A stretch of 64,000 nt of DNA from Entomortierella parvispora E1425 (lineage: Eukaryota; Fungi; Mortierellomycota), in contig BQFW01000004.1 of assembly GCA_020891255.1 (NCBI GenBank), forward strand, positions 248,001-312,000, given 5' to 3'. The stretch's first letter is position 1; each line of letters opens with the position of its first letter. This document shows, one piece after another, positions 27,048 to 46,834 of the stretch. The notes beneath the pieces are model-generated. The model searched no databases. It was not told the origin of the DNA and was given only the letters and a program-made list of their open reading frames with translations. Position numbers and translations under genes: made by a program.

Positions 27048-30000
27048 ATGTCGCACACGACCACCGTGGCCGAGCTGTCCCTCTCCCTGAGCCACGTCCA
27101 GAGTCTGCTCAAGCAGATCACAGCCGAGGTCAAGGTCCTCAGTGACGGGATCGCTGTCCTAGCAGAGCTCGAGGAAACAGGCGATCTGGAGGCTGAGCTG
27201 GATTACCTCGACGTCGATCCCTGGTCCAACGTCAACGACAAGGACAAGACCGCTGCCACAGGCACCGCAACAGCCACCGCAGCGGCTCGACGAGACAGCA
27301 TTCGTTCCCTCTTGCAACGCAGACCCTCGACCGTCAAGGACGAGACAAAAGCCCTGGCCAGGATCTTGAGCCAGAAGCGGACAGGGGCCGGTGGCACCGG
27401 AAGTGGCAGTGAATCTGAAAACAAATCGAGTCAGCACCACCAGGGTCAATCGCAGCCACAGCAGCATGGTGGCTCAAAGTGGTTGACATCCAACTTGCAG
27501 GATCAAGTCATTGAGGAGGATTCAGCTTCGTCAGAAGGCTCGAATTCTTTCCAGGGGGGTCAGCGCAGCGGTGACAAGCAAGAGCTGGAGTCTCCCTCGA
27601 CAGCGACGAACGACGCTTCGGCTTATATGACGATCCAGTCTCTCAATATCGCTTCGACCCCCTCGGCCCCTTCCACCATCCGCCTTGTCGAAGCAGAACG
27701 CGTGCCTCACACGATCTCGGTCCAGACAGCCCACCTTCCAAAGTACTCACTTGCCATCTCAAAGCCTGCGGCGACACCTGTTCTCTCGACCTCTTCCAGT
27801 CAGGGATCCATTCTGGGTGCCTTTGGAGGAACCAACAACATGCTAAACAACAACGGCAGCAATGCTTCTGGGCTGGGAAATCCAGCGGTGCAACCACCCT
27901 ATCATCGGTCTCAGACAGCTCCCAATGTAGACATCAACAACTCCCGGCCAGGTTCTGCCAGTGGCAACTTTGGACAAGGAGACAGCAGGAGTGGCTCAGC
28001 TTCCAGCGTAAGCGGATGTTTTGATGGCTCAGTTTTGTGTACTGTGTCCTCGACCAGGGGTGAGGCTAACAATAACGAGCACATTGGGTGACCATTTGTT
28101 TTGAAAATAGACAATGCGCGGTCGACCCCCTTCCTCAGTCATGGACTCTAGAGCCTCTTCCGAGGTTCACATGGTTGGCCAGACCAGCAGCATTAAGGAT
28201 CGATACAGTGTATGCTCCTTCCCTTTAATATCCTGTCATGCTTGAACGAATGTGCAGTTTCTTTGACTGTGGGGCTTCTAACTGCTATACCGACGGATCA
28301 ATTCAAAAATAGGCTCTTCGATCAGCTTCTCAGGGAACCATTATCCATCCAGCGGTCGGCAGGGACACAGTGAAGTCGACGGTTGTGGTAAAACCACCTT
28401 CACCCATGTCAGCTGCTCAGGTTGAAAAGATAGAGTCTGCAGACTGCTTCAGCAAACTTGGATTGATACCAGAGCTCTTGCGAGGCATCTACGCCTATGG
28501 GTAAACAACGACGGATGCAGTGCCACATCGTTTTTGTTTTCTGTTGTGCAATAATCCGAACTTTGTGAGACTCACCTGGAGAGAGATTCCTGTTTCTGTC
28601 GACTCACTATTTCATAGACTGAAGATGCCGTCCATACTGCAGCAACGCGGGATTCCCATGATCATGACCAAGCATGATGTGCTGATGCAGGCAAAGCCAG
28701 AGGTGGCAAAGACCTTGACCTACGCGATCCCTCTGCTCCACTTTTTGACCTTGCCAGCAACATCAATCCATCCTCAGTTGATCATCCTGTGTTCGAATAA
28801 CGATCTCTGTCAACATGTCCAAAGAGTTCTTCTGGCCTTGGCTAGATTCATGCCCACGATCTCGTGTCTGGTCTGCGCGGAAGGAAGCAACGCCACTCTA
28901 TCTCTGGGAACAATATCTTCTACTCAAGTGAACGTAGCAGGGCATGGAGGTCGGGTTCAGAATCAAGGATTCAGCAACTCTGGAAAAGCGCAGGACCCAT
29001 TGCCGTACATTGCAGCCCACGTCGTAATCGGCACCCCTGGCAAAGTCTTGAATTTGGTGCGGACCAAACAACTTGGACTCTCAGCCCTCAAGGTGATGGT
29101 GTTGGAGAATGCGGATATTCTGCTTGTATCGCCACTGAAGGAGGCTACTGTGAGCTTACTGTCGATAGTCAGAGATACGAGCTCGGTGTCGCCTTCGACT
29201 ACGTCAACAGCAACAGGTCCATCGAGTTCAGCATCAGCACCGGTTTTGGCCTCACCTCCAAATTCCGGGCCAACCTCTCCTGTGTCCTTGGCTGTGGCAG
29301 CCTTGAATGGAAGAATCATGGCCTCCAACTCTGGAAGTGGAACAAACATTGGCCGATTCCCTGGAAGTTATGGCGATGGAATCAACAGCAGTGGCGATAT
29401 TGGAGGGCGGCCACGATCCATGTCCAACGCCACTCCACCGCCATCCACTTCTGGACCCAACTCTACAGCATCCGCCACGGCCGCGACGGCGAGTTCTATA
29501 TCAGCACCACCCCAGCTCCTCTTCTTTTCGACCCTGGTGCCCTCTTATGTGTTGGATTACGTGGCTCAATACACGATTCAACCGACCAAAGCTCTTGTCA
29601 AAGGACATGATTTGGCTCTGAAGGGTATCTTGCAGTTTTTCAAGTACCTGACCGGCGAGGACGACGATTGGCGGCTGGAATCACTCTGTGATCTGTTGGA
29701 GGACAGTGGCGCCAACCGCACCGTCATCTTTTGTAACGGGGATGAGTCTGTCGAAAGAGTTGTTCGGAGAATCCGGGAGGCCAAAGGAACTGCCATTGGC
29801 GTGGTAGGTGACGATACTTGAATGTCTATGCGTCCGGGAACGTTGTGATTGCTGACCATTCTTGCTGGCGCCTGCTCTTTTTTTTTTTTTTTTTTTTTTT
29901 TTCTTTTTTTCGAATGATAGTATACTGAAATGGACGTGGCAGAAAAAAAGTCGGCCTTGGGATGGTTCAGATCCGCAATTGCGCCTTCATATTTCGTGCT

Positions 30001-30446
30001 ATCGGATGAGGCAGCCAAGGATCTGGATATTTTGGCGGTTCCATTGGTTGTGAGTTTCGAGGTGCCCAGTATCTCGCACTATATACCAAGGTAACAGATC
30101 GATTGCAGAATGAGACTTTTACAAGGCCAGTGCAGCAGACATGAGACTAACGGTTCTTTGTGCGATATCTTTATTGTTCCTGACAATATAGAGTGAAGTG
30201 GATTGATCGGTCGAATGGGCGGGTGGGTGTGAAGGTTACATTAGTCGATGGACAGCGCGGTGAAGGACAGGCACTCCGAGCCATTCAACAACATTATCGA
30301 ACCACGATAGATGATATACCGGTAAGTGCGAACATCACGTAGAGAGGCAGAGCTGTTTGTCAGCAAAAGGAGAAACAACCCGACTCACCCTTTGCCGACC
30401 CAATTTCAATATTTAGCCAAGCATTGCCGAGTTTATAGTCAACTAA
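27048..30446 (+). CDS. eIF4A-derived DEAD-box pseudo-helicase with long N-terminal extension (7 exons: 27048-28007, 28111-28209, 28313-28500, 28618-29803, 29921-30090, 30192-30321, 30417-30446)
   Basis: Q-motif [26 protein letters not shown], followed by degenerate motifs: I AKPEVAKT, Ia SNNDLC, Ib TPGKV, II ENAD, III STL, IV VIFCN, V AKDLD, VI PRVKWIDR. All splice sites are GT-AG and keep the frame. Confidence 0.85.
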
Positions 30447-34549: not shown

Positions 34550-36061
34550 ATGTCCATTACTACAATTCAACAGGCTAACAATGGCCTCCCAGTGCACGAG
34601 AACGAGATCGAGGTATCGTCCCCGCATCCCTATCCCCTGCCCCTTGAAATAAACCCGAGGGTTTTACGATCCATTCCACTCACCCTGTAACCCATTCTCA
34701 TCTTTGTATAGTCCAATTGGGACGAGATCATCGACAGCTTTGACGACTTGAACTTGACTCCCGAACTGCTTAGAGGTATCTATGCCTTTGGGTACGTCTC
34801 ACGTAGCCTCGATAGGACATGTCTTCCCAACCTTCCCTGAATAGACACTCACTTTTTTCTTTCTTTGTTGGGCTACTCTCTTCTCTCTACCACAGCTTTG
34901 AACGTCCATCTGCTATTCAACAACGAGCTATCGCACCTGTGATCGCAGGTCGCGACATGATTGCTCAAGCCCAGTCAGGCACAGGCAAGACGGCGACCTT
35001 TTCGATTTCTGTCCTCCAGAACATTGACATGTCGCAAAAGGCCTGTCAAGCCCTGATCCTGGTCCCCACCCGAGAACTGGCGCTCCAGATCCGAGGTGTG
35101 ATCTTGGCCTTGGGGGATTTCCTCAAGGTCGATTGCTTGGCCTGCATCGGGGGCACCAGCATTCAAGAATCCATCCGCCGGTTGGCGGACGGTGTTCAGG
35201 TCGTGGTCGGGACGCCCGGTCGTGTCCTGGACATGATCCAACGCGGGATCCTCCCCACCCAACATGTCAAGATGATGGTCCTCGACGAGGCCGATGAGAT
35301 GTTGCTGGATTTCCGTGAGGCCGTGTACGATGTCTTTCAGCATCTCCCCAAAACGGTGCAGGTCGCCTTGTTGTCGGCTACCATGCCCGACGAGGTCTTG
35401 GCCGTGACGACAAAGTTCATGTCGAACCCTGTTCACATCTTGGTCAAGAATGAAGAGGTGACCTTGGAAGGTAAAAGGCGATGCCAAACAGACGGTGTTG
35501 TAGCTCAGCCAGGATGATCTGTTTTCTCTACTCTCAACACAAGACTGTTTTTTTTTCTTCTTGACCTTGCCAGGTATCAAGCAGTTTTATGTAAATGTTC
35601 AAAAGGAAGAGTGGAAGCTGGACACTCTTTGCGACATCTACGAGACTTTGACCATCACGCAGGCGGTCATCTTTTGCTCGACCCGCCGAAAGGTCGAGAT
35701 GTTGAAGGAGCAGCTGACAGAGCGCGATTTCACGGTCTCGGCCATTCATGGGTCCATGGAGCAGTCTGAGCGTGAGACGATCATGAAAGAGTTCCGATCG
35801 GGCTCCTCCCGCGTCTTGATTGCCACGGATCTGTTGGCGCGCGGCATCGACATTCAGCAGGTCTCGTTGGTGATCAATTTTGATTTGCCAACCAACAAGG
35901 AGAACTATGTCCATCGCATCGGTCGTGGCGGTCGATTCGGTCGAAAGGGTGTGTCGATCAACTTTTTGACCGACAGAGACGCACCCATGCTCAAGGAGAT
36001 CGAGAGATTCTATAGCACTCAGATCACAGAGATGCCCATGAACATTGCAGATCTCATGTAG
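34550..36061 (+). CDS. tif1: Translation initiation factor eIF4A-family DEAD-box RNA helicase (exons 34550-34612, 34712-34791, 34896-35470, 35574-36061)
   Basis: All canonical motifs are present: Q-motif, [40 protein letters not shown] and [13 protein letters not shown]. Confidence 0.95.
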
Positions 36062-36253: not shown

Positions 36254-37762
36254 TCATACCAAAGAGCAATATTCCATGCGAGGCCAGAGTTGAAGGAGTT
36301 GTTGACCATACGGATGTGTCTTCATCTGAGCTCTCGAAGATGTAGGACTGGTCAATTCAGAAAAATCCCATTCGCGCTCCATTCCCGGGAGGGAGAGGGG
36401 TGTCAGTCCGTAGAGTCTTGCTCTAGGCGTCACACCAGAGCCATCGTCCGCATTCATCTCCAAGAAACAGAGGTCTTTCAACAAGGCCAGTTGTCTTCCC
36501 ATCATCGCCTCCTGTACCCTTACGACCTGAGCATTGGCCTTTGTGACCATCGTCCTCACCAGGACCACGCTCAGGGACTCGAGTTTTGAACACACCCAAG
36601 GTTTAGGTGGTGCAGGCTGTTGCATCTGCTTTTGTAGAAGGAGGGAGAGAAGCGAGGGAACAGGGAATCGAACCTCTCGAACAACATCCAGGACCTCCAG
36701 TTTCATCGCACCTAGCTCTCGTAACCGCGGACACAACATCAAGACTTGTCGGCACATCCAGCTCGTGAACCCCAGACAATGAGTGAGATTCAGTTTCTCT
36801 AGGGTATTCAAATGCCGACCCAACGCTATCCAGGATTCAGCTCCAAAGGCAGACCGCGGTAACGCTAGTCCTGTCAGTTTCGGACTGGCGGAAATCAACC
36901 TGGCCAGCTCCAAATCCAAGATGGCGGGTTCAAAGTTGTAGAGGGAATAACTGGTCTGCACAAGACTGATGGACGTCAGTCGGGTCCAAGTGTTGCGTTG
37001 GAGTAAAGTTGCAAAGACGTCCATGGCTCTCGTCAAGGGGTGCTGCACACTGCTGAGGTCCATATCCCAGTCCAGGGTCTCCAGATTCGGACAGGGCGCA
37101 AAAAAGTTGTAGAGCTGATTTTCCCAGCTCACGCTCTGTGGGTCCGACTGGATCCTGAATTCCCGCAGTTTTGGAAAAAGAAGCCCTTCCCTTTTCCAGC
37201 GTTTCGAGTGAGGTGGACTCAATAGACACTTGTTCAGATGCAGGACCTCGAGTTTCTCGGAACAGAGCTCCAACAATTGATCCATAATCGGCTTTGAAAA
37301 CAAGTGCTCCTCCAGTCGCAGTTCTGTTACGAGGGGACGAATGGTCTGAATCAAAGACCAAAACTCGGTCTCATTCGAGGGTGCAGGCAAAAACCGCAAG
37401 CGAAGGTGCCGAAGTCGAGGGTTGCGGTTGGTGATGCCATGGAGAAGCGTTATGGCCCTGGTTGGGTGCATCCGTGTCAGGTTGATGGACAAGTCCTGGA
37501 GCTGAGTGCAGCCACCGGGGTCCGCCAGGATCCAGGATTGCTGTTGAAGCGACATGCTGTTGTGGATATAGAGGCTGCGGATGTAAGAAGTATGACGTTC
37601 AAAGCCGGGGCTGGTCCACTGGTGGTCGTCCCAGGTATGCAGGTGGGCGTATATGAGGGGCGTGAAGGACGCGTGCCAGTCGTGGCAGACCCGTGAGCAC
37701 GAGACGAGGTCCTGGCGGTCGAGGAACTGGCCTGTGTAGTAGCGGATCTCGGCGAGGTTCAT
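36254..37762 (-). CDS. F-box/LRR (RNI-like) protein
   Basis: F-box-like MNLAEIRYYTGQFLDRQDLVSCSRVCHDWHASFTPLIY, repeated CPNLETL/CPRLREL units and the WVCSKLESLSV motif; one long uninterrupted ORF. Confidence 0.85.
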   Translation of the reverse strand: MNLAEIRYYTGQFLDRQDLVSCSRVCHDWHASFTPLIYAHLHTWDDHQWTSPGFERHTSYIRSLYIHNSMSLQQQSWILADPGGCTQLQDLSINLTRMHPTRAITLLHGITNRNPRLRHLRLRFLPAPSNETEFWSLIQTIRPLVTELRLEEHLFSKPIMDQLLELCSEKLEVLHLNKCLLSPPHSKRWKREGLLFPKLREFRIQSDPQSVSWENQLYNFFAPCPNLETLDWDMDLSSVQHPLTRAMDVFATLLQRNTWTRLTSISLVQTSYSLYNFEPAILDLELARLISASPKLTGLALPRSAFGAESWIALGRHLNTLEKLNLTHCLGFTSWMCRQVLMLCPRLRELGAMKLEVLDVVREVRFPVPSLLSLLLQKQMQQPAPPKPWVCSKLESLSVVLVRTMVTKANAQVVRVQEAMMGRQLALLKDLCFLEMNADDGSGVTPRARLYGLTPLSLPGMEREWDFSELTSPTSSRAQMKTHPYGQQLLQLWPRMEYCSLV

Positions 37763-38393
37763 GGGGATGAAGAAATGGGAGGGATGTTTGGAGTGAATGA
37801 AGGGTGAAAAAAAGAAAAGAGTCATGTGTGGAGGGAGAGAAAGAAGGAGACAATGCATAGCCGACATGGTGCCACCAAATCAAATCCCATGTACCATGTG
37901 CCATGTGTGTGGTCCATGCTGGTCATGTGAGGGCAATCTCGGGACATGGGAATGATGCTCGAATCTCTTCCTCTTCTTTTTCTTCTTCTTCTTCTCTTTA
38001 GAGATGATCCTCATCCCTCGGGGTCAACAGCAATGTCCCTCCTCCCGCGTCGCGTCCCTGTCGCGTCCAGGACACGCCTTCCCCTCTCCTCTCCTGGAAA
38101 GGCACCAAGGGGTCTCAGTCAGGGACTATTTTCGTTCATCCCCGACCCAAGGGAGCAAAGCAGGCAACGGCAAAAAAAGAAGAGTGCTCACAACCTTGGA
38201 GCCATTTTAGGAGCAAAACAGCCACCTCTCCCTCTCCTCCTCTCCTGCTCATTGTCCCTCACTTGGTCCCTCGATATATTCTCCTTGGGTCCTCGAGCGG
38301 TTATATTTTAAAACTTTTTTTCATGCAGGTCCCGTCTTTTTTTATACTTATTTTTATTATTTCTATGTGCATTCCCGGCGGGGATCCAGAACC

Positions 38394-39289
38394 TTACTTG
38401 TTCTTCAAAGACACACGCTCCAAGAAGCCGTCAGCGAGCAACTTCATAATGTTGCTGAACGTGTGGTACTGGGTTCCTGCTCCAGGCTGTCCAAAGTAAG
38501 GCGCAATTGGGCCAGCCTCGACATCAAAGGGTTTGATGACCTTGTAGACGTGGTAGTTGAAAGGGTAGAGAGGCTGATCCTTGGGGGCGTCCAAGTTGGA
38601 GGGAGGGATGGACCTCTGAGGGTAAGGTGCCTCTGCAGGTGAGAGGAACGAGCCATATTCACTTCCAAACCGATCCAACAATGTGCCCTCCAGCAACTTG
38701 GCGGTGCCCTTGATAGGTTCGCCAGCGATGTTGAGCAAGAAACCGTCCTTGACGGGGTAGGTATAAGAACCGTTGACGGTCCACTTTGCCAAGAACTCGG
38801 CCGCACAGAGACCTCCGAGACGGTCATAGGGATCCGTAATGTCGTTCAAAGGGAACAGCTTGGGCAGATGCTTGGGTCCAAGACGGGCATCCCGACAAAA
38901 GTAAAAAGTCGAGTTGACAGGCGCGACTCCCTTGCACATATCGGGGCACTATGGAAGCCAAGAATGAAGCAAAAAAAGAAGAAAAAAACAAAAGGTCAGG
39001 GTCATGATAAGTAAGCAGTGGTGGAAGAGTGACAAGAGAGTCCGACGGTGGGAAAGTAACGAACCTTCTTGTTGTAGTTGTTCTCGGACGCAAATTCATC
39101 TCCAGAGAGCTTGGCCTCCTCAGAGTCACCAGCAATGGCGGCGGCCTTCTCGGGAGAGCGGAAGAAGGTGTCATCCAAAGGTGAAGAATCGACGGAGCTG
39201 TCCACGTCCACGGGCGCACCAGCGACGGCGGAGAGGACTGAGCAAAGCACAAGGGCAAAAGTGACCAGGCGTGAGGTAGAGGTGAGCAT
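38394..39289 (-). CDS. Secreted TNT-domain (DUF4237) NAD+ glycohydrolase (exons 39289-39065, 38948-38394)
   Basis: Signal peptide MLTSTSRLVTFALVLCSVLSAVAG, an acidic spacer, then CPDMC..FYFCRDARLGP, YDRLGGLC, LLDRFGSEYGSFLSP, PYPQRSIPPSNL, YHVYKV and GPIAPYFGQPGAGTQY. Confidence 0.92.
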
Positions 39290-39378
39290 GATGATCAGGA
39301 GCAGGGTCGGATGGAGGAAGGATGAACGAAAGACAAGAAAAAGAAGAAAAAAGGCAGAATGTGTGCTGTCTATTTGGT

Positions 39379-39385
39379 TTTTATA
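39379..39385 (-). promoter_or_regulatory. Putative TATA box of TNT NADase gene
   Basis: TATAAAA on the minus strand about 90 bp upstream of the ATG at 39289. Confidence 0.5.
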
Positions 39386-41000
39386 GATGTTTCCATGTCC
39401 TCGAAGCAATTGAAGCGCCGTTAACATCACTGTGATGTGTGATCGCCGTCGAGGGTGATCCACACGTCGAGGCAAAGGAAAAGGTTTAGTTCTGGAAGCG
39501 ACTGGCGCGCAAGTGACTCCGCTAGGCACATTACCGAGATGGGAATATCCTTGTTTGTTGCATGCTTTAGTCCCTGTGAGTTTGAATTTTTTTTTTTTTT
39601 TTTTTTTTTTTTGTATCTCTATTTCCCCCCTGCGCGTGCATGCCTCCAAAGGAATTTCAGAAACAAATAAAATGCGAGAAAGCACCATCCCAAAAAAAAA
39701 AAAAGGAAAAAAAAAGGTGGGAGCATTGAAAAAGAGCAGATGAGCAAAGCAAAAGAGAAAATATGGGACCTTCTGGCCCGTTGAAGAGCTGCGATTTGAT
39801 CGGTGAACATCTCGCTGACGAAAGACAGATTTTTATTTTTATTTTATTTTTTGGCCCTGAACCCGGTTCGTGTAACAGCGCGCTTGCCACTCATTGCCAC
39901 CGATTTGCGCTACAAATTTCAAGTTCTTTGCCCAAAGAAGTCTGGAGGGTGAGGGCAATGTTCAATTGTGCAATCGTGCAATTAGACCTCCACCCCCTCG
40001 TCCTCCAGACAGCGAATACGAAAGAATGGATCGTTGGTCGTACAAGGAAGAACCAAGTGGGTCAAAGATGCTCACGCCGAGAATGTTGCCAGCGTAAAAA
40101 GGTATGTATGCCTTTTCTCCAACAAACACTAACAGCTGAGCTTACAAACATCGCCGCTCAGCAACTGACCTGTAGTACCGTTCGGTAGTACCTTTAACTA
40201 TAGAATCTGTCACTTTGCTCCAGAAGTTCTTTTTTGTATCTCTGGGATATGTACCAAGGTGGAACAAAAACAAGCACTGGATCTCATCCTTCTTTGCGGG
40301 ATTCTTAATATACTCTTGCTGTTCATTCTCCTACGCGTCTATCTCAAAGAGAGTACGCTTTTTGTAGCAGAGAGCTCCTCCCGACGGTGCCTTAACTTGC
40401 GCGCAATGGAAGTGAACCCGCTTGGCCATCCAAGTTGTTGTCAAGGAGGGACGATAGCTTAATCATCATAGAATCATTTATTTCTTTCTGTTGCAGCTCT
40501 TGGGCAAAGGAGGAAAAGAAGAACATAAATCTCTGCCCGAAAGGAGAGAAAGTATGGAGGAAGCTACAACGAAACAGATGACTATGGAAAAGGTTGGAGG
40601 AAAAGATAAAAGAAGGAGGAAGGAGGAGGATGGAAGAGGAAGGAGGAGGAAGGAGGTAGGAAGGAGAAGAGGAAAGCTGATGTTACAGAAGATAAATTAT
40701 ACGGAATAAATGCCTGGAATAGATTGAATGCCGAGATGAAATGCCGAATAAAAAATGAAAAAGAAAACTATGAAAATGGGGCAACAAAAATGAAAGTGTT
40801 GGGCAACAGGGGGCAGACCAAAATGAGAGGAGAGGGACAAGGGAAGAACGGAAAGAAGGATGGGGAAAGGTGATGGAGCGGAGAAAGGACAAGGACGTAC
40901 AATAGTGTACATATACATGGAAGGACAAGAGGAGGAAAAAAATGAACAAACAAACAAAATGACGAAGAAAAAAAAAAAGAAAAAGAAAGTGGTTTCCGTG

Positions 41001-42272
41001 TTACCAGACACGGTCTTCAGCTCCAAAGTAATCGCGCGCGTCGCCCTCGCCTCCGACGGCGCCGCGTCTAGATCCGCCCTGGACCAACTTTGTCTTGACG
41101 GTGGCATGCGTGGGGTTTCGAAGGTACCGGACCGTCGGGGTATCACTGAAGGCGGTGTTGGCTCCAGCGGCCGCTGCCTCTTCACCCTCGGCTGGGATCC
41201 CTTGCATAGGTGAGGTGTAAGGGTTCAACACGTTGAAGTTCATCTCGGAGGCGTCGACCGAGTAGCGACGCATCGACTTGAGCATTCGGCGGCGATTAGC
41301 GTTTTGCTCCAATCGACCACTCACTCCGCTCTGGTTCTGACTGTTCAACATGTCCGAGAGGAGCGATCTTCGAGGCGTTGGCAAGACTGCGTTTAGCTGT
41401 TGGGAAAGAATAGCGCAAGGAGGTTGAAAGAGAAAGGAATGAGGAGTTGATGAGGGGTAGAGAGCAATGAGATAGGAATGGGAGAAAGGGGGGAAGAGAA
41501 AAAGAAAAAAAAAAAAAAAAAGAGAAAAAAGAGAAAAAAGGAGCGATGTGGTTAGCGGCAGGGTTGGGGTTGAGCACATGAAAAGTGCGTGTACACGCGT
41601 TGACCAGCGCATTGCGCCCAATGACAAGTGTTGGTGATGGCAAGGGCAGGGGCGGAGGAGGTGGAAGGGGTCAATGCATCATGCAAAATGAGGATTTGCC
41701 TGCTGGGGGGAGTGATGTACTATTTTGTCGGGCGACTTTGTCTTTTTCTTTTTTTTTTTTTTTTTTTGTTTGGACGTGATCTCCAGCCTGTTCGCGTGCT
41801 ACCGTCCACCAGCGCAAACAAAGGCAAACCTTGGACAGCCCAACAACAACAACATCAACATCAACATTACACATACCTTGACTTTTCCTCCAAGAGAGCC
41901 TGTCGCAACACTGACGACACCATCCTCGGACGAGGTGGGGGGAGAGGCTGCGGCAGAGGAAGCAGAGCTCGACAGGTGAGCCCCTGAGAGCGAGCGCTGA
42001 AGCTGGGACATCGAGATGGTCTCGCTTTTGCGCTGACCATGGCGAGTCATGTTGGGCGAGGCCGAAGATCCGGCGCCGTCGCTCCCCGTGGCAATCGCCG
42101 TAGTGACCGCGCCTGCCTCTGTGATCTCGACAGTGTCATAGTAACGACCACTGTTGGCAGCGGGGTAATAAGAGGGGTGCTCATAATGTTCGTGGTGCGA
42201 GGCCACAGCCAAACAGCTGTGAGAGCGGCGATGATAACTTCCGGAACTGGGACCGATATCAAGTATCATCAA
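41001..42272 (-). CDS. Hypothetical low-complexity S/A-rich protein, multi-exon; structure unresolved
   Basis: A 157-aa ORF (42272-) ends at a GTATGT donor at 41876. There are downstream candidate exons with AG acceptors and a long minus-strand pyrimidine-rich leader (42300-43560). No recognisable domain. Confidence 0.35.
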
Positions 42273-45200
42273 GGAAAAATTCGTGGCGATTCGTCATGAA
42301 GGGAGTTTACAAAAGAAAAAATAAGCATTTCACCAAGGAAGGCAAAGAGGAATGATGGGAAAGAAAAGAAAAAAAAAAAAAAAAAAGAGAAAAAGGTCAA
42401 AAAGTCGGCCGAGCAATTGTGTGGTTGTTCGTGGGGAAGAAAGGAGACAAAGAATCAAGTTTGTTGAAACGGCAAACACGTTCGAGAATGGTGATATTCA
42501 TGGTCGATGGTGGATGGTCGAGAAAGGGAAGGGAAAAGGGAGGGGGAAAAGGAAGGGAAATGGGACCGATGGTCCGGATGTACGATGATGCACGGGTATG
42601 TGGCAACGTGCAGCAGGATGGTAGGACACACACAGGGGCGAAAAAAAAGGTAGACAAACAGACAGTTAGTAAACAGCTCTTGTGTACTTGTTTTTTCGGC
42701 AGAAAGCAATTGAGAACGCGACCATTGTTGTGCTGCATGCAAAACTAGGACGACTATGCAGAAAAACATACCCTTGACGCATTGAGCGACCGGAGGTGGA
42801 GAACTGGTGCGAGTTTTGAACGGCGTTGACGAGCATAGTAGTTTGTACTTGAAAAGAGTAGTAGGGTAGTAGAGTGGTAGGGTAAAGTCTATCGGGTCGT
42901 TTGAGAGTCGATGGAATTCTATGTGGTTCAAAGGGCTGTATTGTTCGTGATTGTAGAGGCGTTGTAAAGATGAAGGATGGTCAGGTAGGCGAGGATGAGT
43001 GTAGGTCTTGGTTTTGGTGGGTGTCTTTTGCCTTGGTGGCGTATGGGGTGAGATTCGTATTCAAGCGGTGGATATGTGAACCGGTAGGGAGAGACTACAG
43101 GTGTGGACTAAGGGATGAAGCTCTTGAGGAAGAGAAGAGAAGAAAGAGGGGGAGGAGAGGAAGGGAGGAGGAGGAGGAGGAGAAAGAGAGTTGAGAGGTC
43201 GTTGAGAAAAGTTGAGAAAAAAGATCTTGAGATATGAAGTGAATGAGGAAGAAAAGGCGAAAAAGGTGGGAAGATGGATGTATTTATCCATTTCTGTTGT
43301 CTTCGAGGGGGAGCCGACCCCCGGCTGGCTCTTGGAGACCCTTGGAGGCACAAGAAGGGGTAAGGACGATCAAATTCAGGAGGGGTTCCGTACTGGAGGG
43401 AAAGAAAAGACAGCGGAGGAAGAGGAGTGTGGAGCACCGAGGAAGGATGGAAACATGGCCTTCAATTCAATCAAAGTAAAGAATGATGGAGTGAAAACAA
43501 GGAGGTTATGGAAAGAGGGGGAAGAAGAGGAGGATTGTTGATTGGATCTGTGTTTGTGAACTGAACAAAGTAAGTCTTTATCATGCAAGGGAGCTTCGTT
43601 TGTGTGTCTAGTTCAATTGCCCAACGTCCAAGCAAATGCGACCAAGCGAGCGAGAGCGAGATAAACAGGGAAAGGCAACGATACCCTGGAGACTGTTGGA
43701 GAAAAAGGGGGTCAAATGGACCAAAAGTACCTCCAATGCTCAGATCAAAGAGAAATGGAGAAACGTTACTGCTTCCCATCTGGACTAAATGCCTCTGCCC
43801 ATCTCGCGACAGTCCACATCTATGGTCCCCCCCGTCCTGCTGCCTCTGTCTCTTCAATGCCATTGTTCGCAGGACCACCTCTATCGCCTCATCACCATTG
43901 TCGTCATGATGTTAATGCAACGCTGCAGACGAGCGATGATCCATTGCACAAACACCACGCAGCTTCGCCAGCTCTTGACACACGATGAAATAAGTCTGAG
44001 AAAGTGCAAAAATAAAGGAGGTTCCAGCCGTGTTGAAACATCAGGGGAGAGGCGAGTTTTGGGAATGCGCCGCGATGGGAGTGACTTTTTTTGTCGCTTG
44101 TGTGGGGAGGAGGGGAGCACAGAGCACAAGCATGGCCTGTAAATAATAATTGCAAGGAGGCTGTGGGACAATCTGGTTCCTTCCTTGTGTGTCTGATCTT
44201 GTTCCCTTAGATGAACTTGGGCCGACACTCCCTCATCCCTGCGATGCACAAGCCATTGGGAGATGCAGCCCGCGCAAAATAAAAAAATCGAGACGAACAG
44301 ACCAATGGAGATCGCTGATGAATGAAGGCATCCGCTTTTCCGTGCTCCAGCAAGGGACACGCTGAACGAACCGTGGGAGGCAGTCAGACGGAGAGACAAA
44401 GAGGCCCCAGGCTGCCCAAGTTCCGAGACCCAAGGGAGGTCCGCACACCGAATTTTAAACGAGGTTGGTCCTCCCATTCAAGCCAACCAGTGGATCGCGG
44501 TTCTGCTCCTTTTTTCAAACTGATGGCACATGTACGCTTGTGATACCCATGGATAACTGTAGCCAACGGCCATTCCACTCATCCATCTGTATGTCTGTTG
44601 TTGTTAACTCTTCATGCCTTGCTTCCAGCTCTCGGCCGAGGACGGGGAAGGGTGATCGACCTGCGAAACAGGGACCACCAAGAGACAAAAGACAGGCAGG
44701 CAAAAGTCCACTGTGAGCAACGCCGTTGAGAACAAAAAAAGACAGGGACGGTGCTATTATAACGATCTTGTGAACATTGGCTGAGGTAACAGCGACAGAG
44801 TGTCTACTTTTTCCTCCTATTTCCTCGAAGAGTTCTTACTGCTGGTTTCCGTTTCCAATTGCTGCTGCAATGCAGGAGCACAGAGCACCGAACAACAGTG
44901 CACAGTCCATTGGCCATCTCTTTTTTTTTAGTGCAACTGCAACAAATGTTTTTTTTTTTTGGTCTTGTCATCCATCGACCGTTGAGACTTACTTGTGCAT
45001 ATGCATACAAAGTGCAGCTGCTCTTGTTTTTCTTTGCTCCACTTCTTTCTAAAAGTTCTTTTGCTGCTCAATCTCAACGGAAAAAGAAATAAAAACCTCC
45101 TTGCAGAGTTTCATCAAGAACGCTCTATTTTCAACCGAGAGGAAAACTTTGTCCATCCCCTTCACGCTCGGCACCAGACTCGGGAACGAGAGAGGAGGGC

Positions 45201-45527
45201 TTCGAAAGCTAGTATCTCTCTCTCTATCTCCCTCGACCAACTCCTCTTCCCCCCTCTCCTTCTCTTTCTCTCTTCCTCTGCTCGGCCGTGTATTTTTGTG
45301 TTGCACAGCATCAATCATGGCATCCCTGCATCCTGCAAGTAGCCGGGGTCCCGGACCGCGTGAAAAGGACCCCAGAAATTAACGGTGTAGTCGTGATCCA
45401 AAAGTAAATCTTCATGACTCCGTCGATAGGCAAGGATGACCAACGGCATGGATCGCTTATTCATGCGGCCCCGTTAACTCTGTTTTTTCCTTGAATGCAT
45501 AAAACACAAACTCAACCGCTTGTTATC

Positions 45528-45584
45528 TACAGTGTAAGTCGCACAATGGACCGAAATTCGGTCTAATTTGCGACTTACACTGTA
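45528..45584. mobile_element. Tc1/mariner-type MITE or internally deleted element (53 bp, 45530-45582) with TA target-site duplication
   Basis: TA|CAGTGTAAGTCGCA...TGCGACTTACACTG|TA: a perfect 14-bp terminal inverted repeat starting CAGTG and a near-palindromic interior. Confidence 0.75.
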
Positions 45585-46834
45585 CATGGAACTGAAAAAA
45601 AGGTTGCAAAGAACAGACCCTTGTTATTTTTTTTTTGAGGTATGACGAGGCCCAAAGCCCAACGGTCTTGTGTTCATGGCCCCGTTGCGAGGGCAGCTCA
45701 GCCAGCCCACACCCTCTTCAGCTTTGCCTTGGTCACCAAACACAACATTCATGCATGAACAGGTAAGGCTCAATTGCGCACAACATCCAAGATAATGGAC
45801 GGCGGGAGTTTGACTCCTTCTGTAAGACACAATGCAAACAACAAACTAAACATTGCTTAGATCATGTCGACGAGTGTTGTTTCTCACATCTACCTTCTAT
45901 CCTACGGAAAAGTCAAGATAGTTACAATCTCGGTGCTAGGACAACAGGTCCGCAACGTTAGTGGACATTGACAAAGAAGGTCCAGATCTCTGAGAAGGGA
46001 GGGCTAGAACACTTTAGATATTCATGCAGAAATAACAAAAAATTAGTTCGATATACGCCCAATGGCCACCACAGCACATGGGCTGACAGTACTTTCTCGA
46101 TAAATAAGCATGCAGCGCGCAATTGAGCGCGTTTGAGTGCAGGTTCGTGAGCCATCCGATTTTATACCCTTGCCGCCTGTCATTGGTTGCTTTTCTGGAT
46201 AGAACATATTGACTACATTCCCTCAGTTGCATCTCTTGTCCCTCATCTTTCAGTAGCTCTCCCAGCTCTCCCCCCCCGCGTTCTATTTTCGACTGTTCGG
46301 CCTGGGGGGTAGGGTCCAGCTGGGATCGTTACACCAGGCTGGAACACACCATGAAAGTCTGTTTGGCTCCAGGGGCCGTGTTTCAAGATGACCAAACCAT
46401 TGATGAGGTGAGCATGCGACAGTGGTCAAATCAAGGAGAAGTCGCACTTTCGCGCACGGATGAAGACTATGCCTCTAGAAAGTAACACGCTTGGCTTTGC
46501 CACCAAAAGAGACGCTCGTTCCTGAAACGGTGTCTCCTGGTGACTGATCCGGGATGTGTTTTTAGCCGGTCGTTTATTTTTTTTTGCTCCCACCCTTTGA
46601 TATCCCGCGTCGGTCACAGTGCGGAAAGAATGACCCATAGCCCCAATTGTCAAACGCCAACGTCAACGTCAACGATGGTGTGGCGCAAACCGTGACTTGT
46701 TCGTGGAGCTCACTTGACTCTTGGTCAAACAGAAAATTCGATTGCCGTGCGGCGTAACTCATTCTGTCCAATCACATCCCCGCAGTGGCCGCGAAGGTCA
46801 ATTGAGCGTTCCCGCGCGCCTGGTAGGTCTCGAC

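What the first reader, a model, noticed from the sequence alone, without database searches (positions are those of the whole stretch)
38394..39289. Secreted TNT-family NADase in a non-Dikarya fungus
Seen: a signal peptide, a ~50-aa acidic spacer ending NKK on its own exon, four Cys, and intact DRFG (Arg), SFLSP (Phe) and GTQY (Gln) motifs; no acidic C-terminal tail. Known: these motifs define the TNT domain of M. tuberculosis CpnT and the surface NADases of Aspergillus and Neurospora, described mainly in ascomycetes; the Aspergillus enzyme has an acidic Ca2+-binding C-terminus. Inference: an active extracellular NAD(P)+ glycohydrolase for competition or host interaction, Ca2+-independent, perhaps horizontally acquired and with a removable pro-segment. 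No immunity gene is evident nearby.
Basis: partly seen in the sequence, partly recalled or inferred. Interest (0 to 1): 0.75.

Follow-up and report, generated by a model that had tools for sequence, protein, structure and literature searches.

The report
Secreted NADase gene in Entomortierella
This is an intact gene for a secreted enzyme that destroys NAD outside the cell, an ordinary member of a fungal enzyme family already described (including in this fungal group), with an extra acidic linker but no sign of recent horizontal acquisition.

Summary
A two-exon minus-strand gene (39289-39065, 38948-38394) encodes a 259-aa protein. It has a signal peptide, a 50-aa acidic spacer ending in NKK at the exon border, four Cys, intact DRFG/SFLSP/GTQY motifs and a short, non-acidic C-terminus. 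It is EMPS_02686 of Entomortierella parvispora (Mortierellomycota), a single-copy gene.

It is a full-length orthologue of the fungal surface NADases: Pfam TNT E 3e-34, and about 50% identity (E 1e-55) to the AfNADase, NcNADase and FoNADase1 crystal structures. Every catalytic and substrate-binding residue is kept, as are both thumb disulfides and two of the three glycosylation sequons.

The novelty claim fails. Ferrario et al. 2024 already list Mortierellomycotina and Mucoromycotina members, restrict the Ca2+ site to Eurotiomycetes, restrict the IFT immunity protein to Actinomycetota, and raise HGT.

There is no sign of recent transfer:
- All sampled Mortierellaceae genera carry the gene as one clade (100/99).
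- They share one intron position.
- GC3 matches the neighbouring genes, and dN/dS is about 0.1.
- A vertical topology is not rejected (AU p 0.2).

The pro-segment idea is unsupported. There is no conserved dibasic site, the last ten spacer residues are family-conserved, and the remaining 27 residues are a species-specific insertion predicted with low confidence. Verdict: new member of a known kind, low interest.

The parts
39065..39289 (-). Exon 1 (75 codons): start codon, signal peptide and acidic spacer
   Evidence: Translation. It equals residues 1-75 of P0001. The donor GTTCGT follows directly at 39064.
39215..39289 (-). Signal peptide, about residues 1-25 (Arg7, hydrophobic core 8-22, small residues A-G-A at the end); cleavage probably between residues 23 and 26
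   Evidence: Mean Kyte-Doolittle hydropathy is 2.35 over residues 8-24. It aligns with the signal peptides of the orthologues. The AfNADase signal peptide was confirmed by MS (PMC7955114). No dedicated signal-peptide predictor was available.
39128..39208 (-). Species-specific 27-residue acidic, Ser/Asp-rich insertion (residues 28-54) within the spacer
   Evidence: It is gapped in all 17 other sequences of alignment A1, including the 232-aa Mortierellaceae orthologues. AF2 pLDDT is below 50. Spacer GC3 of 0.70 is coding-like.
39065..39094 (-). Family-conserved end of the spacer (residues 66-75, pattern F-x-x-E-N-N/H-x-x-x-K just before the first Cys)
   Evidence: It is conserved in Linnemannia, Podila, Dissophora, Gryganskiella and Mortierella alpina/antarctica orthologues. 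The AF2 model has a short helix at 72-75.
38949..39064 (-). Intron, 116 nt, phase 0, GT..AG, immediately before the Cys76 codon
   Evidence: 42% GC against 54-57% in the exons. Podila horticola and Mortierella alpina have the same position and phase. Athelia and Neurospora do not.
38394..38948 (-). Exon 2 (184 codons plus stop): whole catalytic protein, thumb plus TNT palm
   Evidence: Translation. It equals residues 76-259 of P0001. PDB matches cover exon-2 residues 2-179.
38706..38948 (-). Thumb domain (about residues 76-156) with Cys76, Cys80, Cys93, Cys123 and sequons N87 (NST) and N134 (NGS)
   Evidence: It aligns with the AfNADase thumb (residues 20-117). There the disulfides are C33-C80 and C38-C50 and the glycosylated sites are N45 and N95.
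38412..38696 (-). TNT (palm) domain, residues 160-254
   Evidence: Pfam PF14021, E 3.4e-34, profile positions 2-88 of 88.
38670..38672 (-). Arg168 codon (DRFG), equivalent of AfNADase R129
   Evidence: Read from the sequence. Arg in 17 of 18 sequences of A1 (His in the Gamsiella protein P0018) and invariant in A2. The R129A mutant of AfNADase is inactive.
38646..38648 (-). Phe176 codon (SFLSP), equivalent of AfNADase F137
   Evidence: The F137A mutant of AfNADase is inactive.
38469..38471 (-). Gln235 codon (GTQY), equivalent of AfNADase Q194
   Evidence: The Q194A and Q194K mutants of AfNADase are inactive.

Best explanation
The gene encodes the Entomortierella parvispora orthologue of the fungal surface/ecto-NADase, the NadA/AfNADase family, which has a fungal-type thumb domain plus a TNT palm domain.

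Proposed mechanism, all inferred from homology:
- The signal peptide takes the protein into the ER.
- There the thumb is locked by two disulfides (Cys76-Cys123 and Cys80-Cys93) and glycosylated at N87 and N134.
- The protein forms a head-to-tail homodimer and is exported to the cell surface or the medium.
- It hydrolyses NAD+ and NADP+ to nicotinamide and ADP-ribose(-phosphate) by the TNT mechanism. Arg168 holds the nicotinamide and water I, Phe176 shields the beta-face, and Gln235 polarises the 2''-OH.
- It has no cyclase or base-exchange activity.

It lacks the Eurotiomycete Ca2+ site and the Fusarium-type terminal cysteines. Its dimer is therefore most likely held by polar or electrostatic contacts between the N- and C-termini, as proposed for the Neurospora enzyme.

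The gene is old and under purifying selection within Mortierellaceae. The long acidic spacer is a flexible, species-specific linker and not a propeptide. No immunity protein is needed, because activity is confined to the secretory pathway and the outside of the cell.

Shown here: gene structure, family membership, residue conservation, single copy, family-wide distribution, selection. Inferred: secretion, disulfides, dimerisation, activity, biological role.
For: - Pfam TNT scores E 3.4e-34.
- PDB 6YGE/6YGF/6YGG, 8PMR, 8PMS, 8R15 and 8R17 match at E about 1e-55 over exon-2 residues 2-179.
- The Foldseek top 13 hits of the AF2 model are all fungal NADases, TM(target) 0.69-0.77.
- Alignment A1 keeps the equivalents of AfNADase R129, F130, S132, F137, L138, R148, N154, Q194 and Y100. 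It also keeps the four thumb cysteines and the sequons at the positions of AfNADase N45 and N95. The roles of these residues come from PMC7955114.
- The C-terminus ends 4 residues after the TNT domain, with no D/E/E motif and no Cys.
- Orthologues at 61-87% identity (BLAST, exon-2 query) occur in Linnemannia, Podila, Mortierella, Dissophora, Gamsiella, Gryganskiella, Haplosporangium and Entomortierella. They form one clade at 100/99.
- The same phase-0 intron occurs in E. parvispora, Podila and M. alpina.
- dN/dS is 0.09-0.16.
- The gene is single-copy in the genome.
- GC3 is 0.66-0.70, against 0.63-0.65 in the neighbouring genes.
- The literature places Mortierellomycotina sequences in clade II with NcNADase.
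Against: - No enzymatic, expression or localisation data exist for any Mortierellaceae member; no paper holds both 'Mortierella' and 'NADase'.
- The third AfNADase glycosylation site (N118) is lost in this species (KGTAK, against KGNAT in most of the sampled orthologues).
- The C-terminus is much shorter than that of NcNADase, so the residues that stabilise the dimer are unknown.
- The AF2 model is only moderate (mean pLDDT 66.8) and was built from a shallow alignment.
- Signal-peptide cleavage was judged from hydropathy and alignment only.
Confidence: 0.85

Rival explanations
1. The gene entered the Mortierellaceae lineage by horizontal transfer from a Dikarya fungus or an actinomycete. This would be an ancient event at or before the base of the family, not a recent one in E. 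parvispora.
For: - With the actinomycete outgroup, the Mortierellaceae clade sits among Dikarya groups and is not sister to all of them.
- The intron position is not shared with Athelia or Neurospora.
- Actinomycete proteins are 41-47% identical over the thumb and palm domains, against about 50-57% for Dikarya.
- Ferrario et al. 2024 raise intra- and inter-kingdom HGT for this family.
- The distribution in fungi is patchy.
Against: - The relevant forks are unresolved (89/87, drawn open).
- The AU test does not reject Dikarya held together (p 0.2).
- Fungi and actinomycetes separate at 100/100, and Sordariomycetes, Basidiomycota and Leotiomycetes are also split, so the gene tree is weak at depth.
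- Composition is native.
- The gene is present in all sampled genera of the family.
Confidence: 0.3
2. The acidic exon-1 spacer is a propeptide that keeps the enzyme inactive until it is cleaved after the K-K pair.
For: - The spacer ends in Lys-Lys directly before the folded domain and coincides with an exon border.
- It is acidic (12 acidic and 5 basic residues) and predicted with low confidence (pLDDT below 50).
Against: - The pair before the first Cys is not conserved as a dibasic site in orthologues (V-K, K-K, R-Q, R-K), and K-K is a poor Kex2-type site (established knowledge).
- The ten residues before Cys76 are conserved across the family, which suggests they belong to the mature protein.
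- In the solved enzymes the N-terminus takes part in the head-to-tail dimer that is required for activity.
- Most of the acidic part is a 27-residue insertion unique to this species.
- No propeptide is reported for AfNADase or NcNADase.
Confidence: 0.08
3. The protein is a catalytically dead or repurposed TNT-fold protein, for example an NAD-binding lectin-like surface protein.
For: There is no biochemical data for this clade. The very short C-terminus might compromise the dimer that activity requires.
Against: - All residues whose mutation kills AfNADase are kept, as are all substrate contacts.
- Purifying selection is strong.
- Actinomycete homologues with equally short C-termini keep the same catalytic residues.
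Confidence: 0.04

Closest known systems
Neurospora crassa conidial NADase (NcNADase, clade II of Ferrario et al. 2024; PDB 8R17 core)
   Same: - Signal peptide, thumb plus TNT palm.
- Same catalytic Arg/Phe/Gln.
- No Ca2+ motif and no terminal inter-chain cysteines.
- About 54% identity over exon 2.
- The paper places Mortierellomycotina sequences in the same clade.
   Different: - NcNADase has a longer C-terminus (to ...PRNY). Its Asn242 and Tyr243 bond the partner's N-terminus; the Entomortierella protein stops about 5 residues earlier.
- NcNADase lacks the first Cys at the aligned position.
- The intron position differs.
- The 47-50-residue spacer is absent.
Aspergillus fumigatus AfNADase / NadA (PDB 6YGE, 6YGF, 6YGG)
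   Same: - About 50% identity, E 3.7e-55.
- The same fold (Foldseek top hit).
- The same two thumb disulfides.
- Sequons at N45 and N95.
- All active-site residues.
   Different: - No C-terminal extension with the D219/E220/E223 Ca2+ site.
- The N118 sequon is lost.
- The accessory loop differs (KDQPLYPF in place of NTFDGMYPY).
- A long acidic N-terminal spacer is present.
Actinomycete secreted TNT proteins ('Clade S': Kitasatospora, Streptacidiphilus, Streptomyces, Catenulispora and others)
   Same: - Stand-alone proteins, from open frames of about 210-280 codons, with an N-terminal hydrophobic leader.
- 41-47% identity across thumb and palm.
- Arg/Phe/Gln invariant.
- The C-terminus ends right after the domain.
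   Different: - Bacterial, with no introns.
- A different cysteine pattern: one Cys aligned with Cys80 and another before the N-Y-H motif.
- A 10-residue insertion after the catalytic Gln.
- They separate from all fungal sequences at 100/100.
Mycobacterium tuberculosis CpnT C-terminal TNT toxin with IFT (PDB 4QLP)
   Same: TNT palm fold and the same hydrolytic chemistry (Foldseek E 1.4e-6).
   Different: - 17% identity.
- The TNT domain is the C-terminal domain of a large outer-membrane protein.
- The thumb differs, with no disulfides and no glycans.
- It acts inside host cells and needs the IFT immunity protein. None of this applies here.

Membership tests
Fungal surface/ecto-NADase (NadA/AfNADase family) | TNT (PF14021) palm domain | tested here: met
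   E 3.4e-34, 117.6 bits against a cut-off of 27, full profile coverage.
Fungal surface/ecto-NADase (NadA/AfNADase family) | Catalytic motif Arg-Phe-Gln (AfNADase R129, F137, Q194) | tested here: met
   Arg168, Phe176 and Gln235 are present and aligned. Their essential role in AfNADase is from PMC7955114.
Fungal surface/ecto-NADase (NadA/AfNADase family) | Substrate-contact residues (Af Y100, F130, S132, L138, R148, N154) | tested here: met
   Tyr139, Phe169, Ser171, Leu177, Arg187 and Asn193 are present in the query. Phe169, Ser171, Arg187 and Asn193 are invariant and Tyr139 nearly invariant in A1; Leu177 is Leu in most rows and invariant in A2.
Fungal surface/ecto-NADase (NadA/AfNADase family) | Fungal-type thumb domain stabilised by two disulfides (Af C33-C80, C38-C50) | tested here: met
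   The PDB alignment starts at exon-2 residue 2. Cys76, Cys80, Cys93 and Cys123 align with the four AfNADase cysteines. The bonds themselves are inferred.
Fungal surface/ecto-NADase (NadA/AfNADase family) | N-terminal secretory signal peptide | tested here: met
   Arg7 followed by a 15-residue hydrophobic core (mean hydropathy 2.35) and small residues at the end. It aligns with the leaders of the orthologues. No SignalP-type predictor was available.
Fungal surface/ecto-NADase (NadA/AfNADase family) | N-glycosylation of the thumb | tested here: met
   Sequons N87 (NST) and N134 (NGS) sit at the positions of AfNADase N45 and N95. The third site (N118) is absent. Occupancy cannot be tested.
Fungal surface/ecto-NADase (NadA/AfNADase family) | Head-to-tail homodimer required for activity | not testable with these tools
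   Only single-chain prediction is offered. The requirement is from PMC11187862.
Fungal surface/ecto-NADase (NadA/AfNADase family) | Pure NAD(P)+ hydrolase activity on the cell surface | not testable with these tools
   This needs an enzyme assay and localisation work.
Clade IV (Eurotiomycete, Ca2+-regulated) NADases | C-terminal Ca2+-binding motif Asp219/Glu220/Glu223 | tested here: not met
   The protein ends at ...LERVSLKNK, before the position of the motif.
Clade I (Fusarium/Botrytis) NADases | Conserved N- and C-terminal cysteines forming intermolecular disulfides | tested here: not met
   There is no Cys after residue 123, whereas the Fusarium protein P0116 has a C-terminal Cys.
CpnT-type bacterial TNT toxin with immunity factor | TNT as the C-terminal toxin domain of a larger carrier protein, plus an adjacent IFT immunity gene | tested here: not met
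   This is a stand-alone 259-aa secreted protein. The large flanking ORFs scanned gave an F-box-like match (below Pfam's cut-off) and a DEAD-box helicase, and no convincing ORF was seen in 39.3-46 kb. IFT itself was not searched for here. It is reported only in Actinomycetota.

The most novel reading that the evidence does not exclude
Mortierellaceae NADases may use a fourth, undescribed way to clamp the head-to-tail dimer. The family-conserved acidic/polar N-terminal motif (F-x-x-E-N-N...K before Cys76) would pair with the very short, always basic C-terminus (LK[HN]x, LRR). The enzyme could then serve root-associated Mortierellaceae such as E. parvispora to remove extracellular NAD(P)+, which plants perceive as a danger signal. 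The species-specific acidic spacer might tether the enzyme to the cell wall or modulate it.
Probability: 0.15. Interest if true: 0.45.

Novelty: new member of a known kind. Interest (0 to 1): 0.2.

Why it matters
It matters little beyond annotation. The gene, deposited as 'hypothetical protein' (EMPS_02686; UniRef: 'TNT domain-containing protein'), can be named a secreted TNT-type NAD(P)+ glycohydrolase.

It adds detail to a published picture. Mortierellaceae carry one conserved copy, with a family-specific intron, a minimal C-terminus and a conserved N-terminal motif.

If someone wanted to study how ecto-NADases work without the Ca2+ or disulfide clamps, or whether plant-associated Mortierellaceae degrade extracellular NAD(P)+ in the rhizosphere, this would be a suitable candidate. 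None of this challenges current understanding.

Tried and rejected
1. Recent HGT was rejected. Composition is native, the gene is distributed across the family, the intron is shared and the Mortierellaceae form one clade.

2. Deep HGT against vertical descent was tested with an 88-row ML tree and an AU test. The result is unresolved: p 0.2 for the vertical constraint.

3. Microsynteny with Podila horticola and Mortierella alpina was checked over ±10 kb. Only the NADase gene itself matches, so synteny gives no help either way.

4. I asked whether the 27-residue insertion could be an unspliced in-frame intron. This was rejected on codon-like GC3 (0.63-0.70, against 42% overall GC in the real intron) and the lack of splice or branch signals.

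5. I tried to learn whether the placement of E. parvispora with Linnemannia/Podila is gene-specific, using two neighbouring genes as species markers. Both failed. The F-box-like ORF is nearly an orphan, and the helicase is a divergent eIF4A paralogue found almost only in this species.

6. The look-up of encoding contigs finds no record for P0001, because the genome's own records are withheld.

7. The supplement of Ferrario et al. is not held, so their species list could not be checked.

9. The two exons were never joined by me. Searches used each exon by reference. Where a full-length protein was needed, I used the database entry P0001.

Full report
**What is there**

The finding's coordinates hold a two-exon gene on the minus strand.
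- Exon 1 (39289..39065) has 75 codons. It encodes a signal-like leader and then a 50-residue spacer whose last residues are N-K-K.
- A GT..AG intron of 116 nt follows (39064..38949; 42% GC).
- Exon 2 (38948..38394) has 184 codons plus the stop.

Each exon was searched by reference. The deposited protein P0001 (259 aa, 'hypothetical protein EMPS_02686 [Entomortierella parvispora]') is identical to exon 1 over its first 75 residues and to exon 2 over the rest, checked piece by piece. P0001 was used wherever a full-length sequence was needed.

The organism belongs to Mortierellomycota, so 'non-Dikarya fungus' is right. The gene is single-copy in the 38.9-Mb assembly.

**Check of the observation**

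- The spacer has 12 acidic and 5 basic residues.
- The mature part has four cysteines (76, 80, 93, 123). A fifth lies in the signal peptide.
- DRFG is at residue 167, SFLSP at 175 and GTQY at 233.
- The C-terminus ends four residues after the domain and is basic, not acidic.

**What it is**

Exon 2 matches Pfam TNT (PF14021) at E 3.4e-34 over the whole profile. More tellingly, it matches the crystal structures of the fungal surface NADases over nearly its whole length, thumb domain included, at about 50% identity. These are AfNADase 6YGE/6YGF/6YGG, 8PMR and 8PMS; the N. crassa core 8R17; and F. oxysporum NADase I 8R15. E-values are 1e-54 to 1e-55 over exon-2 residues 2-179.

An AF2 model (mean pLDDT 66.8, from a shallow alignment) finds these same entries as its top 13 Foldseek hits. 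Mtb TNT (4QLP) comes far behind.

Alignment A1, read against Strømland et al. 2021 (PMC7955114), shows the following.
- Arg168, Phe176 and Gln235 correspond to R129, F137 and Q194, whose mutation inactivates AfNADase.
- The nicotinamide and ADP-ribose contacts Tyr139, Phe169, Ser171, Leu177, Arg187 and Asn193 are kept.
- The four cysteines align with the two thumb disulfides, C33-C80 and C38-C50.
- The sequons N87 and N134 sit at the glycosylated positions N45 and N95. The third sequon (N118) is lost in this species but kept in most sampled Mortierellaceae.

Pairwise dN/dS for exon 2 against Podila horticola and Mortierella alpina is 0.09-0.16, with dS near saturation. This is an intact, constrained enzyme gene.

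**How it most likely works (inferred from the characterised homologues)**
- The protein enters the secretory pathway through its signal peptide.
- It forms disulfides, is glycosylated and assembles as a head-to-tail dimer.
- It is then exported and hydrolyses NAD+/NADP+ to nicotinamide and ADP-ribose(-phosphate), without cyclase or base-exchange activity.

The Ca2+ site of AfNADase (D219/E220/E223) lies in a C-terminal extension that is absent here. The terminal cysteines of the Fusarium clade are absent too. The dimer must therefore be held by non-covalent contacts, as proposed for NcNADase.

No immunity protein is expected for a secreted glycoprotein. IFT is reported only in Actinomycetota. 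The flanks show only an F-box-like ORF, a DEAD-box helicase gene and a 7-kb purine-rich stretch without a convincing ORF.

**The spacer**

Most Mortierellaceae orthologues are 232 aa long. The extra length here is a 27-residue Asp/Ser-rich insertion (residues 28-54) found in no other aligned sequence. It is modelled with pLDDT below 50.

Its codon composition is coding-like, so it is not a missed intron.

The last ten residues before Cys76 (F-x-x-E-N-N/H-x-x-x-K) are conserved across the family. The pair just before the Cys is V-K, K-K, R-Q or R-K, which is not a conserved dibasic processing site.

In the solved enzymes the N-terminus forms part of the dimer interface. A removable pro-segment is therefore unlikely, and a flexible linker plus a conserved N-terminal contact motif is the better reading. 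The coincidence with an exon border is a family trait: the same phase-0 intron stands before the first Cys in Podila and M. alpina.

**Horizontal transfer**
- Orthologues occur in all sampled genera of Mortierellaceae, at 61-87% identity.
- In an 88-row ML tree they form one clade (100/99), and a sample of 23 actinomycete homologues separates from all fungi (100/100).
- The Mortierellaceae clade falls in an unresolved polytomy with basidiomycete, eurotiomycete, leotiomycete and sordariomycete-plus-lecanoromycete groups.
- Holding all Dikarya together, which is the vertical topology, costs 17.5 log-likelihood units and is not rejected (AU p 0.2).
- GC3 (0.66-0.70) is like that of the neighbouring genes (0.63-0.65).
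- Intron positions are not shared with Athelia (three other introns) or Neurospora (one other intron). Flanks are not syntenic even within the family. Neither observation discriminates.

So there is no recent transfer. An ancient transfer into the family's ancestor stays possible but has no positive support.

The genome-contig scan found 392 bacterial loci, and all 80 listed are actinomycete. They encode stand-alone proteins 41-47% identical over thumb and palm, with the same catalytic residues. This fits the 'Clade S' relationship already described in the literature.

**Comparison with what is known**

Ferrario et al. 2024 (PMC11187862) already report the following.
- TNT NADases occur in Mortierellomycotina and Mucoromycotina, in their clade II together with N. 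crassa.
- The Ca2+ motif occurs only in Eurotiomycetes.
- IFT is absent outside Actinomycetota.
- Intra- and inter-kingdom HGT is possible.

No paper in the searched library holds both 'Mortierella' and 'NADase', so no member of this clade has been characterised.

The finding is therefore a correct annotation of a new member of a known kind. What is specific to it is the species-specific acidic insertion, the minimal basic C-terminus and the family-conserved N-terminal motif. These are modest features.

**Verdict**
- Observation: confirmed.
- Interpretation: partly supported. The enzyme class, secretion, absence of the Ca2+ site and lack of an immunity gene hold. The novelty, HGT and pro-segment parts do not.
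- Interest: 0.2.

Noticed in passing
window 34819-36061 (+): EMPS_02684 is a DEAD-box gene whose first large exon is only 64-69% identical to canonical eIF4A of any fungus. The canonical E. parvispora eIF4A lies on another contig (P0159, 67%). The only close relative is one metagenomic fragment (87%). It looks like a fast-evolving, lineage-specific eIF4A paralogue, and it lies a few kb from the eIF4A-derived pseudohelicase that another note reports at 27048-30446.
   Followed up: partly
window 36254-37867 (-): This 537-codon ORF, directly downstream of the NADase gene, has a weak F-box-like match (E 8e-5, below Pfam's cut-off). It is almost an orphan: apart from the genome's own entry, it has one environmental fragment at 78% and one Gryganskiella protein at 34%.
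   Followed up: partly
NADase tree, P0001 against P0022 and P0025: In the NADase tree E. parvispora groups with Linnemannia/Podila (100/99, 73-87% identity). It does not group with E. chlamydospora or E. beljakovae (67-69%). This could reflect paralogue sorting, transfer within the family, or a genus that is not monophyletic. My two attempts to get a species marker from neighbouring genes failed.
   Followed up: partly
window 39300-46000: About 7 kb on the 5' side of the NADase gene is purine-rich on the + strand (GC skew 0.2-0.3, AT skew about 0.19). It has a T26 run, GA-rich microsatellites and no convincing ORF. This is an unusually long gene-poor stretch for this window.
   Followed up: no
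L003-L082 (actinomycete loci), e.g. L004:2848-3540: All 80 listed loci (of 392 bacterial matches) are actinomycete and carry stand-alone TNT proteins, from open frames of about 210-280 codons in most, that also share the fungal thumb region. Compared with the fungal enzymes, they have a 10-residue insertion right after the catalytic Gln and a different cysteine pair.
   Followed up: partly
P0018 (Gamsiella multidivaricata orthologue): This orthologue has His in place of the catalytic Arg (DHFG instead of DRFG) and lacks the N-terminal part in its annotation. It may be an inactive copy or a sequencing or annotation error.
   Followed up: no
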